Made by a program: the position numbers and the translations under genes. DNA of 64,000 nucleotides from Dendrobates tinctorius (lineage: Eukaryota), in NCBI RefSeq assembly GCF_039654945.1, contig NW_027361687.1, positions 73,470,001-73,534,000 of the forward strand, written 5' to 3'. Positions 1 to 7,311 of the stretch are shown here, piece after piece. Numbering within the stretch: the first letter of the stretch is position 1; each line of letters opens with the position of its first letter. The notes below the pieces were generated by a model. It was not told the origin of the DNA, searched no databases, and saw nothing but the letters and a program-made list of their open reading frames with translations.

Positions 1-165
1 ACCTTTGTGCAATGACGTGCAATCCATACTGGGCCTAACACCGTCTGAGCCTGCCTCATGCTGTATAGACATATATTTTGAATGTGTACGCTATCCATAC
101 ATGTTATCCAGGGATACGGTACCCTTTCTAACCTTTGTGCAATCACGTGCAATCCATACTGGGCG
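1..165. repeat. Short direct duplication, 130-bp spacing
   Basis: ACCTTTGTGCAAT(G/C)ACGTGCAATCCATACTGGGC occurs at 1 and at 131. Confidence 0.6.
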
Positions 166-254
166 TGAGAACGGCTGGCGAGCTGTTAAGCAAGCTACAG
201 CACCTGTCCAGACAAGTACAGGGATTCCCTAGCGAGGAGACTTATTTGATTGTT

Positions 255-698
255 TTCTATGTTGGGACAGCAATTTTTGGGGAGCACTATACTCTGGAGA
301 ATGATAGATGGGGCCCACCATACACTGGAACATTCCAAAGGTGGACATCAGACACTGGAGCAGCATTTACAGGGACCATTATACACTAGAGCATTAGAAA
401 TGGGGCCCATTATGTTTGGAGCATTATTTGGGCCCATAAGACAGTGGAGCTTCATCCATGGGGACCAACATATACTGTAGCATTATGTGGAGCTCATCAT
501 ATACTGTTTCAAACATTATATGGGACCAATGATTTTGTATGGAGAAATAGATGGGCCTCGTCATGAGATGTAAAAAGTGAGGTATTTTTCATTGTACTAT
601 ACCGCTATTTCTCTGCCGTATCGGAGCATGATGAGTTGTGGTATGTGTTAAAGGGGCGCTCTTTCGCCCAGGGCACATGAAAACCTGCAGCCAGCCCT
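255..698. mobile_element. Degenerate non-autonomous DNA transposon end (hAT-like MITE) with internal ~30-bp tandem repeats
   Basis: Degenerate units like GGAGCATTATNTGGGGCCCATNATATACT. Ends in GCAGCCAGCCCT, which resembles a CAGGGCCGGC-type hAT TIR. No TSD visible. Confidence 0.35.
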
Positions 699-699
699 C

Positions 700-1010
700 C
701 CCCCCCACAAATTTAGCCAAATAACCCCCATTTTTCAGTGCGTAACTTGTATTATGAAGTTAATTAAGGTTGACAAGCTTAAGTAAGAAGAATTGATGCT
801 TTTGGCATTCAAATGGGCAATGTAGGTGTGTTTCCTGTCCTCCTCTCACTGCCGACTTTTATTCCCCATTGACTTACATTGGGTTTCGTGTTTCGGGACG
901 ACCCCGACTTTTCCCTATAATCGGACGATCTTGCTCGACCCGACTTTTGGAAAAGTCGGGTTTCACGAAACGAAACGCGACCCTAAAAAACCAAAAGTCG
1001 CTCAACTCTA
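700..1010. mobile_element. hAT-type non-autonomous element, one terminus
   Basis: Ends ...AAAAGTCGCTCAACTCTA (rc TAGAGTTGAGCGA), the same TIR class as the TSD-validated element at 59393-60796. Subterminal CCCGACTTTT repeats. Abuts the Helitron helicase codons. Confidence 0.6.
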
Positions 1011-1235
1011 GCTATGACCATTAACAAATCCCAAGGACAGACCCTCAATCGAGTTGGCATTTTTTTGCCCGAACCTGTATTTGCCCATGGACAATTGTAT
1101 GTTGCATTCTCCCGAGTAAAGCAACGCAGCAACGTTAGGGTCAAAGTGGTGGATACACCACTTCAAGGACAATTGCTACCTAATAGCCCAAAAATCTTCA
1201 CTAGAAATGTCGTTTACAAAAATGTCTTACTTTAA
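1011..1235 (+). pseudogene. Helitron RepHel C-terminal fragment (PIF1-family helicase motifs V/VI)
   Basis: AMTINKSQGQTL...VFAHGQLYVAFSRV...TRNVVYKNVL* is the typical C-terminus of Helitron PIF1-like helicases. It is 5'-truncated at the hAT terminus. Confidence 0.9.
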
Positions 1236-1699
1236 ACTATTTAAGTTGGTCCTGGAATTGATAGATATATAGATATATAAATAATAGTTACATTCTAAAT
1301 AGATATAGATAATAGACTTCTAAGACTTCTATACATAGCTTGATATATGTTATATATATAAATATTTTAAGCAGATAGATATATCTTACACTAATTATCT
1401 CTTTCACATATATGTCATAGACATATTTAAATCCATAAAAATATACATAGGTATAGGTATATATAGATTAAAAAAAAAAAGGCAAAATCAAAAAAAATTT
1501 AGGCAAACATACGTAGATTTCAACTACATAGCTAACACATACCTACATAACTTAGGTAATAATAATTAATTTTTTATTTATTAATAGAGTACTATTATTT
1601 CAATAGCACTTTACATACCGTACATCAGTAATACTGTCCTTCTTGAGGCTCACTATGTAAATATCTTATCCACATAAAAACATAGGTGTGATACATCTA

Positions 1700-3577
1700 T
1701 CTACTATAATAAATGCGCTAAGCAGCTTCCGGGTTGTAACAACTTCCGTCCAGTTGTAACTGGTGATGTCACAGCACACCTCTTGCCATGTTAACCCTCA
1801 ACACACCACTCCTCCTCAACACACACTCCTGTCACCTTTCACTATCTCCACTAACGTCCAGTCGCAGGATTTTAGAATACTCAAGATGGCGTGGCCGCAA
1901 GAACATGTCGCCGGCGTGGACAACGTCGGGATTTAGGATGGCGCCGGTGGAAGAAGATGTCGGGGATCGTGGAGCAGCGATGATGATGGTGTGAGTATGA
2001 GAGACGGAGTGAGAGAAAGGGTCGTATGTGGAGTGAAAGAGTGAGTGGAGATGGTGAAAGGTGAGAGGAGTGTGTGTTGAGGCGGTGTGGTGTGTTCAGG
2101 AGGAGTGTGTGTTGAGGGTTCACATGGCAAGAGATGTGTCACTATCCTCCCGATGCGATAGCATCGGGCCTTAATCTACTATAATAAATGCGCTAAGCAG
2201 CTTCCAGGTTGTAACAACTTCCGTCCAGTTGTAACTGGTGACGTCACAGCACACCACTTGCCATGTTAACCCTCAACACACCACTCCTCAACACACACTC
2301 CTCTCACCTTTCACTATCTCCACTAATGTCCACTCGCAGGATTTGAGAATACTCAAGATGGCTTGGCCGCAAGAACATGTCGCCGGCGTGGACAACGTCG
2401 GGATCAAGGATGGCGCCGGTGGAAGAAGATGTCAGGGAACGTGGAGCAGCGATGATGACGGTGTGAGTATGAGAGACAGAGTGAGAGAAAGGGTCGTATG
2501 TGGAGTGAAAGAGTGAGTGGACGTGAGTGGAGATGGTGAAAGGTGAGAGGAGTGTGTGTTGAGGCGGTGTGGTGTGTTCAGGAGGAGTGTGTGTTGAGGG
2601 TTCACATGGCAAGAGGTGTGTCACTATCCTCCCGATGCGATAGCATCGGGCCTTAATCTCCTATAAAAATGCCCTAAGCAGCTTCCGGTTGCAACAACTT
2701 CCGTCCAGTTGTAACCGGTGACGTCACCGCACATCTCTTTCCATGTTAACCCTCAACACACACACTCCTCTCACCTTTAACAATCTCCACTCACGTCCAC
2801 TCACTCTTTCACTCCACATACGACCCTTTCTCTCACTCCGTCTCTCACACTCACGCCGTCATCGCCGCTGATCCACGATCCCCGACATCTTCCGCCGGCG
2901 CCATCCTGGATCCAGACGTCCTCCACGCCGGCGACATGTTCTTGTGGCGACGCCATTTTGGATCGGCGAAATCCCGCGATAGTCAAGATGGCGTCGCCAC
3001 AAGAACATGTCGCCGGCGTGGAGGACATCGGGATCCAAAATGGCGTCGACGCCATTTTGGATCCCGACGGCATCCACGCCGGCGACATGTTCCTGCGGCG
3101 ATGCTATTTTGGATCGGCGAAATCCCGCGATACTCAAGATGGCGTTGCCACAAGAACATGTCGCAGGCGAGGACGACGTCGGGATCCAAAATGGCGTCGG
3201 CGAAAACTCGCGAGATTTCGCCGACGCCATTTTGGATCCCGACGTCATCCACGCCGGCGACATGTTCTTCCGGCGACGCCATCTTGAGTATCGCGGGATT
3301 TCACGATACTCAAGATGGCGTCGCCGCAAGAACATGTCGCCGGCGTGGACAACGTCTGGATCCAGGATGGCGCCGGCGGAAGATGTCGGGGATCGTGGAG
3401 CAGCGGCGATGACGGCGTGAGTATGAGAGACGGAGTGAGAGAAGGGGTCGTATGTGGAGTGAAAGAGTGAGTGGAGATGGTGAAAGGTGAGAGGAGTGTG
3501 TGTGTTGAGGGTTAACATGGCAAGAGGTGTGATGCTATCGCATCCTCCCGATGCGACAGCATCGGGCCATAATCTAG
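1700..3577 (+). mobile_element. Tandem array of three non-autonomous Helitrons (1700-2174, 2175-2656, 2657-3577)
   Basis: Each unit starts TCT(A/C)CTATAA after an A and ends with the hairpin CCCGATGC-GA(T/C)A-GCATCGGG. The last unit ends CTAG (3574-3577) followed by T, giving A|TC...CTAG|T with no TSD. Confidence 0.85.
2730..3531. repeat. Long imperfect palindrome with alternating ~62-bp CpG-rich modules
   Basis: Arms of ~230 bp (2730-2960 vs 3311-3531) are reverse complements. Six copies of the module CAAGATGGCGTCGCC...GAACATGTCGCCGGCGTGGA...GGATCCAAAATGGCG lie in alternating orientation. Confidence 0.9.
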
Positions 3578-3769
3578 TAGTACTATAAGCACAAGAAGTG
3601 CCCGCACAAATAATAACACATAATATATGATAAAATTAAAATTAAATTGTATTATACCATATCACATAGATAATAGATCACCTCACCAGGAATAGAATAG
3701 CAATAATTAAATACTGTAAAAATATTAAAAGGTAGAGTACCCGTATTCACAGCCATTTTGGATAGAAGC

Positions 3770-4440
3770 AGCGGAGGGGGAGTAATTTAATCTAGAAAAA
3801 AAACACTTTTTTGGAGTATTCTATAACACTAAAATGTACCGCAAAGTACATAATACTCAATGGATCACACAATATATTCAATATATATTTTTAAATGGAC
3901 TGTACAGCCCTAATCCCTGTCTCTAGACTGAATTCTGTCACTCTCCCTGTTTCTGTGACTCCCCGTCCCTAGGCTAAATGCAGATTGTATGTGATACAAA
4001 CGATTAGCCCTTACAAGGACTGTTAGTGTGATGGCCCAGCTTCAGCACTAGTATGAACGGTACAGGCCTCTGATTCTTTATACTGTGCGCACACAGGCCT
4101 AGACAATCACTCTCTCCCTCCCTTACAAAGTGTCACAGAGCTGTGCAGTGGGGTCAGTAGTATGCCGAGCCAGGCGGCGCCTGTTCTTTTATAACCCCTG
4201 ATGATGTCACACAGCCAGCCAGTCACAGTAATGCCACAACCAAGATGGCTACAGCATCATCAGTGATGTGCAGGCAATCAGCGCCTTCTTATTGGCTGTG
4301 TAACAGGCGCCAAAAATTCGGGGCGGGAATTTGAGTTTTACATCGAGCAATGCCAAATGCTCGCTGATTAACGAGTACATCCGAGCACCGTGATACTCGA
4401 GTGACAACCAAGTATCACCGAGCATGTTCACTCATCCCTA
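3770..4440. mobile_element. hAT-type non-autonomous remnant, one terminus
   Basis: Ends GTTCACTCATCCCTA (rc TAGGGATGAGTGAAC) with subterminal CGAG/CTCG repeats like those at 22440-22541. The left boundary is approximate. Confidence 0.55.
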
Positions 4441-7311
4441 ATGGTAACCAACAGCCTGTTCCTCACATACTAATGTTCTTCACTGTTGTGGAGTCTCACA
4501 CTATCTGTACAGTTTCTTCAGCATTGGCTTTCTTTCCCCATCGCTATGAGCGGTGATGTCCTCTTACTATTCAGATTCACTATGAAATGGCTGCTGCAAT
4601 TCCTGCATTTTGCTTTTATACTGTCTCTGATAGTTACTCCTGTTTGGCTGCACTTTTTGTCATATTTTTTACATTCTTCATGGCCATCCTTTCTGGACTA
4701 TCCAATTTCTAGGGCATCGTAAATGATGTCATGTACATGGGAGACCAGTTAGAATTCATTAGATGCCACTAGGAGACTGGAGTGGGTAACATGGAGGTAA
4801 AGTGGTGCAGCTAGTTTTGCATACTGAAAGTTGTGGACAATGAGAGCCTTAAACTGCAAATGTACAGACAGTGGTCCATATCCTGGGGAAATTTCAAAAA
4901 AGTATTTGGGGGACGCTGCATAAAGGTATTATAATTGGGGGCACCTCTTTAAAAAATCACATGTGTAAAAAAAAAAAATACAAAAAAAAACTTTAAGGGA
5001 GTTTGGGACTTTCGAGAGAATTATTAAAATTATTTAATTGCTTCACAAAGGGAAATTAAGCAACTTTTTAAACACTTTCTACACTTGTTACACAAGTATA
5101 AGATCACCTGCTCCTGGCTCTGACAGTTGTCTGTGCTCTTCCCCCTCCCTTCTCTCAGTATTAGAAATAATAGCAAGGAGGCAATTGTATACATATCTTC
5201 ATAATATGGAAAGGGGAGAAAGTTTCTACAGTCTCCAGGAGGGTAGAGAAAAGAGTCTATAAAGAAGGAAGCACATGAAATCTAAATATAGGCAGCACTG
5301 GTAGCTCAGGGGTTAGGAGTGTGAACCCCAATGAGAACAATGATGAGATTTCATGTAAAGCAATGTGGAATATGATAAAATAGGTAAAATAAAAAAAAAT
5401 ACAAAACTAAGATGAATAAAGTGCAGGATAAAAGCTGTGCTGATATACAGTCATTACTGAAAGTGTTGGCATCCTAGAAATTGTCCCAGAAAATTATTGC
5501 AATTACACGTTTTGTTATGCACATGTCTATTTCCTTTGTGTATATTGGAACAACACAAAAAAAGAGAAAAAAGGCAAATTTACATAATTTCACACAAATA
5601 CCCACAAATAGTCCTGACAAATTTGTTAGCACTTTTCCAAAATTGTGGGTAAACAAGCTTGCTTCAAGCATGTGGTGCTCGTTCACCTGTGTCAAATAAC
5701 ATGTGTGGGCATATATGAAAATCACACCTGGAACCCGATAAAATGGGGAGAAGTTGACTCAATTTTTGTATTGTGTGTCGGGGTGTGCCACATTAAGCAT
5801 TGAGAACAGAAAGAGGAGAAGAGAACTGTCGGAGGACTTGAGAACCAAAATTGTTGATCAATAGCAAGAATCTTAACCCCTTTCTGCCATGTGACGTACT
5901 ATCCCGTCCATGTGCCCTGGGACTTAATTCCCAGGGATGGGATAGTACGTCACCGCGATCAACGGCGCTCACAGAGTGAGTGCTGCTGATCGCGGCCGGG
6001 TGTCAGCTGATTATCACAGCTGACACCCGGCATTATGTGTCAGGGGCGGTCACGGACCACCCCCGACACGTTAACCTCTTTCACACTGCGATCAAGCATG
6101 ATCGCGGTGTACCGGGGGTTAAAGGGAAGCATCGGCAGGGAGGGGGCTCCCTCCGTGCTTCCCTGAGCCCCCCACAGCAGCGCAATGTGCAGCGCTGCTG
6201 CGGGGGTCTCCTTCCCTGCAGGTCCCCGGATCCAACATGGCGACGGTGACCTTCGGGGGCCTGCAGGGAGCTAGCTTCCTCAGTGCCTGCAAAGCGCAGG
6301 CATGAGGAAGTCTGCTTCAATGCCTGTGACAGATCGCTGATCTGTCACAGCGATCTGTGATGTGACAGATCAGCGATCTGTCACATGACAGTGATGTCCC
6401 CCCTGGGACAATGTAATAAAGTTAAAAATAAAAAGTGTAAAAATAATTTTAAAAAAATCGCTAAATAAATAAAAAAAAAAAAATATTCCCTAATAAATTC
6501 ATTTCTTGGAAATAAAAAAAAGTACACATATTTGGTATCGCCACGTCCGTAACGACCCGCCCTATAAAACTGTCCTATTAGTTAACCCCTTTAGTCAACC
6601 ACTTAAAAAATAAAATTAAAAAACGAAGCAAAAAATAATGATTTATTATCAAACCGCCGAACAAAAAGTGCAATAACGCGCGATCAAAAAGACGCATATA
6701 AATATCCATGGTACCGCTGAAAACATCATCTTGTCCTGCAAAAAACAAGCTGCCACACAGCGTCATCAGCAAAAAAATAAAAAAGTTATAGCTCGCAGAA
6801 TAAAGCGATGCAAAAATAATTATTTTTTATATAAAATTGTTTTCATTGCATAAAAGCGCCAAAACATAAAAAACGACATAAATGAGGTATCGCTGTAACC
6901 GTACTGACCCGAAGAATAAAACCGCTTTATCAATTTTACCGCACGCAGAACGGTGTAAACGCACCCCAAAAAGAAATTCATGAAACGCTGGTTTTTGTTC
7001 ATTCTGCGTCCCAAAAATCGGAATAAAAAGTGATTAAAAATTGTCACTTGCCCGAAAATGATACCAATAAAAACGTCAACTCGTCCCGCAAAAAATAAGA
7101 CCTCACATGACTCGGTGGGTCAAAATACGGAAAAATTATAGCTCTCAATATGTTGTGATGCAAAAACTAATTTTGCAATAAAAAGCGTCTTTTAGCGTGC
7201 GACAGCTGCCAAAAATAAAAACCGCCATAAATAGTAAATCAAACCCCCAGTTATCACCCGCTTAGTTAGGGAAAAGAAATAAAATAAAAATGTATTTCCA
7301 TTCTCCCATTA

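What the first reader, a model, noticed from the sequence alone, without database searches (positions are those of the whole stretch)
1700..3577. Head-to-tail non-autonomous Helitrons whose body is a foldback
Seen: three units with Helitron-type termini, each with long internal inverted arms. Unit 3 is an ~800-bp palindrome with nested sub-palindromes; units 1 and 2 are shorter versions with one core module. Established: Helitron1 elements have TC...hairpin-CTRR ends, no TIRs, and move through ssDNA. Inference: this ssDNA would fold almost wholly into a branched duplex, and the alternating modules look like repeated fold-back template switching. I do not know of a described Helitron family with this architecture.
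Basis: partly seen in the sequence, partly recalled or inferred. Interest (0 to 1): 0.7.

Follow-up and report, generated by a model that had tools for sequence, protein, structure and literature searches.

The report
Head-to-tail trimer of foldback-bodied Helitrons
Three copies of a small non-coding rolling-circle transposon (Helitron) sit head to tail in a frog-type genome, and their bodies are long CpG-rich hairpin-forming palindromes; the structure is real and unusual in detail, but it is built from known kinds of parts and nothing here shows a new mechanism.

Summary
Window 1700-3577 holds three head-to-tail units: 1700-2174, 2175-2656 and 2657-3577. The array has canonical Helitron ends: A|TC at the 5' end, and an 8-bp hairpin 11 nt before CTAG|T at the 3' end. 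There are no terminal inverted repeats and no target-site duplication.

Unit 3 contains an 802-bp palindrome (2730-3531). Its core is six alternating ~75-nt modules. As single-stranded DNA it folds at -489 kcal/mol (z -59, 86% paired). Units 1 and 2 are the same element minus one arm. They share one deletion breakpoint and are 60-63% paired.

The array is not a simple rolling-circle concatemer:
- Both internal junctions are 5 nt short of a precise CTAG+TC joint, because the two ends overlap on TCTA.
- Units 1 and 2 are about 96.5% identical to each other but only 89-93% identical to unit 3.

So the array was built in at least two steps.

The body looks like a promoter. CpG o/e is 1.5 against 0.5 for the window. 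It holds 10 YY1-type sites, a CGCG element and outward-facing GTGAGT sites, with ETS and CRE motifs in the 5' end. A Rep/Hel C-terminal remnant lies 464 bp upstream.

Tandem Helitron arrays and promoter capture by Helitrons are already published. The scan has already noted this family on other pieces of this genome.

The parts
1008..1235 (+). Remnant of the last ~74 codons and stop codon of a Helitron Rep/Hel (Pif1-type helicase) gene. It is 5'-truncated, and no other Rep/Hel piece is in the window.
   Evidence: Translation. phmmer gave 5769 hits. The long hits align at their extreme C-termini and carry Helitron_like_N + PIF1 + Pif1_2B. tblastn finds only 999-1232 in the window.
1236..1699 (+). 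AT-rich tail (GC 0.24) after the Rep/Hel stop codon. It forms the left flank of the array and ends ...CATCTA.
   Evidence: There is no hairpin before 1699 (z +0.24).
1700..2174 (+). Unit 1 (475 bp). Order of parts: 5' end (TCTACTATAATAAA...), arm A, one core module, arm B', arm A', 3' hairpin. It ends ...GGGCCTTAA and is fused to the next TC.
2175..2656 (+). Unit 2 (482 bp). Same build and same one-arm deletion breakpoint as unit 1, and 96.4-96.8% identical to it.
2657..3577 (+). Unit 3 (921 bp). Full foldback form, with a complete 3' end CTAG followed by T.
2730..3531 (.). 802-bp palindrome of unit 3: arms A+B+module a on the left against module f+B'+A' on the right.
   Evidence: self reverse-complement alignment. 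I1 165 nt at 96%, I11 65 nt at 94%; 94.8% over 229 aligned positions.
2885..3383 (.). CpG-rich core. Six ~75-90-nt modules alternate in orientation: a 2885-2969(-), b 2970-3047(+), c 3048-3120(-), d 3121-3210(+), e 3211-3298(-), f 3299-3383(+). This equals three tandem palindromic dimers with period 151/175. Zero-spacer centres lie at 3047/3048 and 3210/3211, and the second is a CGCG-element-like CTCGCGAGA.
   Evidence: alignment and identity matrix. (TRF period 151, 2.0 copies, 90%). (I4, I16, D6, D8). (nine AANATGGCG sites inside this stretch out of ten in 1700-3577; CpG o/e 1.54).
2149..2168 (+). 3' hairpin of unit 1 (8-bp stem, 4-nt loop).
2631..2650 (+). 3' hairpin of unit 2.
3547..3566 (+). 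3' hairpin of unit 3, 11 nt before the CTAG end. A loop-flipped partial copy lies just upstream (3531-3544) and gives a competing hairpin.
2169..2180 (+). Junction of units 1 and 2: CCTTAA-TCTACT. The 3' end (AATCTAg) and the 5' end (TCTAC) overlap on TCTA. There is no CTAG.
2651..2662 (+). Junction of units 2 and 3: CCTTAA-TCTCCT. Same form as the first junction.

Best explanation
This is a head-to-tail trimer of one family of non-autonomous canonical (Helitron1, Helibat-like) Helitrons.

Setting. The array sits between an A and a T in AT-rich DNA, 464 bp downstream of the stop codon of a dead, 5'-truncated Rep/Hel gene.

Body. The family's body is a CpG-island-like, promoter-like cassette that has become a long palindrome. 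It carries YY1-type sites, a CGCG element and outward-facing GTGAGT sites, with ETS and CRE motifs in the 5' end. Unit 3 is the full form: arms A-B, then three tandem palindromic module pairs, then arms B'-A'. Units 1 and 2 are a derivative that lost one arm plus the inner modules in a single deletion. That deletion corresponds to 2803-3292 of unit 3.

History (inferred):
1. A primary dimer formed whose joint is an aberrant end-to-end fusion at the 4 nt (TCTA) that the two ends share. The fusion removes the CTAG|TC cleavage site, so the transposase could no longer resolve the joint.
2. One arm was deleted in the upstream unit. This is the usual fate of long palindromes.
3. That short unit was duplicated locally, together with its junction.

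Function. The element is selfish DNA. Its ssDNA form would fold into a branched duplex, but nothing shows that this helps or hinders transposition.

Shown: anatomy, termini, junction form, relative ages and motif content. Inferred: the order of events, the promoter-like origin and the mobility of the family.
For: Termini match experimentally defined Helitron ends. The array has A|TC and CTAG|T, with a 20-nt palindrome 11 nt from the end. Helraiser has TC/CTAG, a 19-bp palindrome 11 nt from the end, and A/T target (PMC4778049).

There are no TIRs and no TSD.

Both junctions have the same form. Aberrant end junctions made up about half of the Helraiser circles recovered before DpnI digestion, and cleavage occurs precisely at the junction point (PMC5876387).

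Identity is 96.4-96.8% between units 1 and 2, and 89-93% between either of them and unit 3. Units 1 and 2 share one breakpoint, GTCCA(G/C)TC|GCAGGATTT.

Palindrome and modules. Folding.

Motif and composition evidence:
- CpG o/e is 1.54 in the core against 0.51 for the window. CpG positions are no more decayed than other positions (7% against 10%).
- AANATGGCG: 10 of the 14 window hits lie here, against 1.5 expected for the whole window.
- GTGAGT: 10 of 31 window hits lie here, and all point away from the core.

The neighbour is a Rep/Hel tail.

Published precedents: tandem Helitron arrays (PMC5876387; PMC12001565; PMC11934779) and promoter plus splice-donor capture by HelibatN3 (PMC4778049).
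Against: No other copy could be examined. Family mobility, empty sites and solo copies therefore rest only on unchecked notes of this scan.

The internal junctions fail the CTAG criterion, so units 1 and 2 are not complete Helitrons on their own.

The TCTA overlap could equally come from microhomology-mediated recombination, or from two successive insertions that each terminated 5 nt early.

No autonomous partner with these ends is shown. The Rep/Hel remnant next door has no matching 3' terminus before 1699.

Promoter activity is inferred from motifs alone.
Confidence: 0.75

Rival explanations
1. One 5'-truncated autonomous Helitron runs from 1008 to 3577. On this reading the 'units' are a tandemly repeated 3'-terminal region (a terminal satellite) of that element, and were never separate non-autonomous transposons.
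For: The Rep/Hel stop codon lies only 464 bp upstream on the same strand. A distant autonomous relative has an AT-rich stretch of about 600 bp between its stop codon and its hairpin-CTAG end (L001). Minisatellite arrays at both ends of an autonomous Helitron are reported in Xenopus (PMC12001565).
Against: Each unit begins with a TC plus TA-rich 5' end directly after an A. Homology among units starts exactly there. The AT-rich flank resumes on the right of the array with the same composition, as expected for an insertion into AT-rich DNA. Notes of this scan describe copies of about 1 kb elsewhere in the genome, but these are unchecked.
Confidence: 0.1
2. The palindrome is a separate mobile element, either a TIR MITE or a foldback-type transposon. 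It was captured by, or inserted into, a short Helitron, and the Helitron is only its carrier.
For: The arms are long and internal. The Helitron-specific ends are short: 73-75 nt at the 5' end and about 46 nt at the 3' end. Captured DNA is common in Helitrons (PMC4778049).
Against: No direct repeat flanks the palindrome: the left side reads ...CCGCAC and the right side reads GATGCT.... The same arm boundaries recur in all three units. No free copy of the arms or the core is present in the 64-kb window.
Confidence: 0.1
3. The array arose by two successive insertions. Each new element terminated 5 nt early, at the pseudo-5'-site A|TCTAG inside its own 3' end, and landed exactly in front of the resident copy's first T. 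No concatemer or local duplication would then be needed.
For: Both junctions read ...CCTTAA + TC..., which is what early termination plus A|T insertion predicts. Unit 3 differs from units 1 and 2 by 7-11%, so it could be a separate insertion.
Against: It needs two independent insertions at the same nucleotide and the same rare termination error twice. Units 1 and 2 share the deletion and are 96.5% identical, which local duplication explains more simply.
Confidence: 0.1
4. Assembly artefact: the palindromes are chimeric or fold-back reads assembled into the contig.
For: Long palindromes are a known failure mode of long-read libraries. No reads could be laid on the region.
Against: The arms differ by 4-17% in substitutions and indels, unlike the near-perfect inverted copies a library artefact would give. 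The structure is nested within intact unique ends. The window has no Ns. The scan noted similar structures on other pieces of this genome.
Confidence: 0.03

Closest known systems
Helibat/Helraiser-type canonical Helitrons and their non-autonomous derivatives (PMC4778049)
   Same: 5'-TC and CTAG-3' ends, insertion between A and T, a palindrome of about 20 nt sitting 11 nt before the 3' end, no TIRs, no TSD, and a non-coding body.
   Different: The body here is a palindrome of up to 802 bp made of alternating modules. The internal 3' ends in the array lack CTAG.
Tandem Helitron arrays and head-to-tail junctions in plants, bats and Xenopus laevis (PMC5876387; PMC12001565; PMC11934779)
   Same: Two to seven head-to-tail monomers of 121-1,996 nt are reported in X. 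laevis. This locus has three monomers of 475-921 bp.
   Different: The junctions are not the precise CTAG-TC joint of transposon circles but a 4-nt overlap fusion. The monomers differ in structure and age, so this is not a single rolling-circle product.
HelibatN3, a Helitron subfamily that captured the NUBPL promoter, a short coding piece and a splice donor (PMC4778049)
   Same: A promoter-like CpG-rich cassette followed by 5' splice-site-like GTGAGT motifs, carried between Helitron ends.
   Different: The cassette here is mirrored, so it points both ways. Its source gene is unknown, and no transcript evidence was available.
Heli2Xen and Helentron/HINE elements with internal minisatellites (PMC12001565; PMC7492417; PMC4067079)
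   Same: The internal array has repeats of about 150-175 bp (166 bp in Heli2Xen), occupies much of the non-autonomous element, and varies in copy number.
   Different: Those are Helitron2/Helentron elements with direct tandem repeats. Here the ends are Helitron1-type and the repeat unit is itself a palindrome.
Foldback (FB) transposons and TIR MITEs
   Same: Long inverted arms built of sub-repeats, and strong hairpin potential.
   Different: The arms do not reach the element's ends. The ends are asymmetric (TC ... hairpin-CTAG), and there is no TSD.

Membership tests
Canonical Helitron (Helitron1), non-autonomous | 5' terminus TC directly after a host A | tested here: met
   A1699|T1700 C1701. 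The same TC plus TA-rich start is found at 2175 and 2657.
Canonical Helitron (Helitron1), non-autonomous | 3' terminus CTRR directly before a host T | tested here: met
   CTAG 3574-3577 before T3578 at the outer end. It is NOT met at the two internal junctions, which read AATCTAC and AATCTCC.
Canonical Helitron (Helitron1), non-autonomous | Short GC-rich hairpin about 10-12 nt upstream of the 3' end | tested here: met
   8-bp stem and 4-nt loop, -10 kcal/mol, z -3.6 to -5.1, 11 nt before the end. Three copies in the window against 0 expected.
Canonical Helitron (Helitron1), non-autonomous | No terminal inverted repeats and no target-site duplication | tested here: met
   The ends are TCTACTATAA... 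and ...CCATAATCTAG. The flanks are ...CATCTA and TAGTAC....
Canonical Helitron (Helitron1), non-autonomous | Dispersed copies with the same ends, and empty sites at paralogous or orthologous loci | not testable with these tools
   No second copy in the window. No hits in the metagenome or viral collections. Only unchecked scan notes speak of other copies.
Canonical Helitron (Helitron1), non-autonomous | An autonomous Rep/Hel partner that shares the termini | tested here: inconclusive
   A Rep/Hel C-terminal remnant lies at 1008-1235, but no matching terminus links it to the units.
Helitron2 / Helentron | Short asymmetric terminal inverted repeats, insertion between T and T, and (for Helentron) an endonuclease domain after the helicase | tested here: not met
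   The ends are TC/CTAG at an A|T site. The neighbouring Rep/Hel ends at the helicase C-terminus, like Helitron1 proteins.
Rolling-circle concatemer (precise tandem Helitron array) | Precise CTAG-TC joints between identical monomers | tested here: not met
   The joints are 5 nt short (a TCTA overlap). The monomers are 475, 482 and 921 bp, with 89-97% identity.
Foldback transposon / TIR MITE | Inverted repeats that reach the element's ends, flanked by a TSD | tested here: not met
   The arms start 73-75 nt inside the 5' end and stop about 46 nt before the 3' end. No direct repeat flanks the palindrome.

The most novel reading that the evidence does not exclude
This Helitron family has turned a CpG-island promoter cassette (YY1, CGCG element, ETS, CRE and outward splice donors) into a self-complementary body. 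The body would grow by hairpin-primed or strand-switch synthesis on the rolling-circle ssDNA intermediate. The family would then do two things. It would seed germline-unmethylated bidirectional promoters and exon traps across a frog genome. It would also use its foldback to self-prime second-strand synthesis. Joints that lack CTAG would be a regular product of a transposase that cuts at the pseudo-5' site inside the 3' end.
Probability: 0.1. Interest if true: 0.7.

Novelty: new variant of a known kind. Interest (0 to 1): 0.35.

Why it matters
If the family census bears it out, this would be a vertebrate Helitron whose cargo is a mirrored CpG-island promoter that resists CpG decay. That would give a natural case for studying three things: how rolling-circle transposons spread regulatory DNA, how long palindromes survive or get trimmed in a vertebrate genome, and how unresolvable end joints lock Helitrons into arrays. 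As it stands, it is a well-documented example of known phenomena (tandem Helitrons, cargo capture and palindrome decay) at one locus.

Tried and rejected
Searches for other copies:
- blastn of 1000-3700 against the whole window found no other copy.
- Exact-pattern scans with a core 22-mer and with the 3' hairpin found nothing in metagenome contigs or viral contigs.
- The search of earlier findings by sequence was blank.

Searches for the autonomous partner:
- The look-up of encoding contigs for the 73-aa ORF found nothing on record.
- For P0036, the closest helicase tail, no DNA was available.
- L001 and L002, more distant autonomous relatives, share no DNA with this locus beyond a 24-nt AT-rich match. 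Their 5' regions lack the motifs seen here.

Tests of what the body might be:
- Rfam gave only sub-threshold miRNA-hairpin matches, which are generic for hairpins.
- Pfam on the four longest ORFs inside the palindromes found nothing, so they are by-products of GC-rich symmetric sequence.

Tests of the flanks:
- A second 3' end at 3788-3795 (TAATCTAG) has no hairpin before it (z +0.58).
- Alignments of the flanks to the element ends are not significant.

I did not use the big word-index protein search. Its length window would exclude any host protein whose first exon might be the cargo.

Full report
**What is there**

The window has no Ns and reads like an anuran genome. The stretch 1700-3577 is a direct array of three related units:
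- u1: 1700-2174 (475 bp)
- u2: 2175-2656 (482 bp)
- u3: 2657-3577 (921 bp)

The units align over a common 5' end, common arms and a common 3' end.

The outer boundaries are canonical for Helitrons. A1699 is followed by TC (1700-1701), and CTAG (3574-3577) is followed by T3578. Each unit carries the same 20-nt palindrome, with an 8-bp stem and a 4-nt loop. It is found three times in 64 kb against none expected. It folds at -10 kcal/mol with z -3.6 to -5.1. In u3 it lies 11 nt before the end.

This geometry is the same as the experimentally characterised Helraiser: TC/CTAG ends, a 19-bp palindrome 11 nt from the end, and an A/T target (PMC4778049). There are no terminal inverted repeats and no target-site duplication.

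**The foldback bodies**

In u3, 2730-3531 aligns with its own reverse complement. The best sub-arms are 165 nt at 96% and 65 nt at 94%. Identity is 94.8% over 229 aligned positions.

The core (2885-3383) consists of six modules of about 75-90 nt in alternating orientation, labelled a to f. This is the same thing as three tandem copies of a palindromic module pair:
- TRF reports period 151, 2.0 copies, 90%.
- The third pair is spaced by 175-176 nt (D1 and D8).
- The 151-nt period equals 175 minus a 24-nt deletion of the palindrome centre that is still present at 3199-3222 (read).

Two centres have zero spacer: 3047/3048 and 3210/3211 (I16 and I4).

As ssDNA, u3 folds at -489.2 kcal/mol against -159 for shuffles (z -59) and is 86% paired, in a branched shape. 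u1 and u2 keep only the outer arm A/A' (91-93% complementary) around one module and the right-hand arm B'. They fold at -109.5 and -119.3 kcal/mol (z -9.6 and -11.8) and are 63% and 60% paired.

Relative to u3, u1 and u2 lack what corresponds to 2803-3292, which is the left arm B plus modules a to e. Both share the same breakpoint, GTCCA(G/C)TC|GCAGGATTT. One deletion event therefore preceded their duplication. Loss of one arm is the expected way for a long palindrome to become stable. That step rests on general knowledge, not on a test made here.

**The array is not a simple concatemer**

Transposon circles join CTAG directly to TC (PMC4778049; PMC5876387). Here both internal joints read ...GGGCCTTAA-TCT(A/C)C.... 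That is 5 nt short of the precise joint. The 3' end (AATCTAG) and the 5' end (TCTAC) are merged on their shared TCTA, and no CTAG is left.

Identity between units is also uneven:

| Pair | Identity |
|---|---|
| u1 vs u2 | 96.4-96.8% |
| u1 or u2 vs u3 | 89-93% |

The simplest history has three steps:
1. An aberrant dimer joint formed.
2. One arm was deleted in the upstream unit.
3. The short unit was duplicated locally, together with its joint.

Aberrant joints made up about half of the Helraiser circles recovered before DpnI digestion, and the transposase cuts exactly at the junction point (PMC5876387). A joint without CTAG|TC should therefore be unresolvable and would lock the units together. 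That last link is my inference. Two alternatives remain open: two successive insertions that each terminated at the pseudo-5' site A|TCTAG, and microhomology-mediated recombination.

**Is 'repeated fold-back template switching' shown?**

Only partly. A tandem duplication of a unit that is itself a palindrome is formally the same product as an adjacent inverted duplication. The two zero-spacer centres favour a mechanism that makes symmetric joints.

The module identities do not sort cleanly by orientation:

| Modules | Identity |
|---|---|
| b-e | 93% |
| d-e | 92% |
| b-d | 92% |
| a-f | 88% |
| a-c | 86% |

With modules of about 75 nt, these differences amount to a few bases. Other notes of this scan report 175-bp repeat arrays in solo copies elsewhere in the genome (unchecked). 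The module array is therefore probably a family trait that predates this locus.

**What the body looks like**

The core has CpG o/e 1.54 and GC 0.60, against 0.51 and 0.44 for the window. Across the eight module copies, CpG positions carry no more deamination-type changes than other positions carry changes of any kind (7% against 10%). The cassette has therefore escaped the usual methylation-driven decay, or it is young.

Motif content:
- Ten of the window's 14 AANATGGCG sites lie here, against 1.5 expected for the whole window. That this is a YY1-type core is my own knowledge.
- The palindrome centre at 3210/3211 is CTCGCGAGA, the CGCG element described for bidirectional CpG-island promoters (PMC6192621, abstract).
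- The 5' end of each unit carries ETS-like ACTTCCG, and u2 and u3 carry a perfect CRE, TGACGTCA.
- Ten of the window's 31 GTGAGT sites lie in the arms, and all point away from the core.

This is the layout of a promoter, short first exon and splice donor, mirrored. Helitrons are known to capture exactly such pieces: HelibatN3 carries the NUBPL promoter, six codons and a splice donor and works as an exon trap (PMC4778049). No transcript or methylation data were available, so promoter function is a hypothesis. The ORFs inside the palindromes have no Pfam match, and Rfam gives only generic sub-threshold hairpin hits.

**Surroundings**

Positions 1008-1235 encode the last 74 residues and the stop codon of a Helitron Rep/Hel. 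The query found 5769 proteins. The long hits match at their extreme C-termini and carry Helitron_like_N, PIF1 and Pif1_2B domains. Nothing else of the gene is in the window.

A 464-bp AT-rich tail follows, up to the array. A similar AT-rich stretch resumes after the array. I read this as an insertion into the AT-rich tail of a dead autonomous copy. The rival reading, in which the whole of 1008-3577 is one element with a terminal satellite, cannot be excluded without other copies. There is no hairpin before 1699.

**Comparison with what is known**

Published precedents:
- Forty-three arrays of two to seven monomers of 121-1,996 nt in Xenopus laevis (PMC12001565).
- Internal minisatellites of 166 bp in Heli2Xen (PMC12001565).
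- Promoter capture by HelibatN3.

My searches found no description of a Helitron whose body is a long nested palindrome or a YY1-rich CpG island. The library excludes most subscription journals, Repbase and Dfam, so absence there is weak evidence.

This scan has already met the family on other pieces of the same genome: s1-389201, s1-389209, s1-369605, s1-382954, s1-377151, s1-389195 and s1-377319.

**Limits**

All conclusions about mobility, copy number, module-number distribution, empty sites and read support are untested. Those tests need the genome or reads, which these tools did not give me.

**Verdict**

This is a new architectural variant within a known kind. Its interest is moderate for transposon specialists.

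Noticed in passing
window 3578-3590 and 3788-3796: The right flank starts TAG-TACTATAA. TACTATAA occurs only 4 times on the + strand of the window, and two of those are the 5' ends of units 1 and 2. TAATCTAG, the last 8 nt of the 3' end, recurs at 3788-3795; it occurs 3 times in the window. That copy has no hairpin before it and is followed by A. These may be relics of older ends or a target preference that resembles the joined ends. General alignments of the flanks to the ends are not significant.
   Followed up: partly
window 3531-3566: Unit 3 carries a loop-flipped partial copy of its own 3' hairpin core just upstream (3531-3544). This gives a competing 14-nt-stem hairpin, and the MFE fold prefers it to the canonical hairpin.
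   Followed up: no
window ~851-1010: A MITE-like block with several CCGACTTTT / AAAAGTCGG inverted repeats, including the perfect hairpin CCCGACTTTTGGAAAAGTCGGG at 939-960. It abuts the point where the Rep/Hel reading frame breaks off at about 1008. It may be the insertion that truncated the gene.
   Followed up: no
window 273-560: A run of degenerate 30-60-nt direct repeats (GGGCCCA...ACACTGGAGC type). Family D10.
   Followed up: no
window 1-177: A 47-nt direct repeat at 87% identity with a spacing of 130 nt (D20).
   Followed up: no
window ~5889-5955 and 5900-6300: An inverted repeat (GTGACGTACTATCCCGTCC ... GGGATAGTACGTCAC) at the edge of a GC-rich stretch with GC up to 0.67. It looks like the end of another element.
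   Followed up: no
L001 9660-10268: An autonomous Helitron from another organism (GCA_030710605.1) shows the expected tail: stop codon, an AT-rich stretch of about 600 bp, a GC hairpin, 12 nt, then CTAG|T. It serves only as a yardstick for the spacing in this window.
   Followed up: partly
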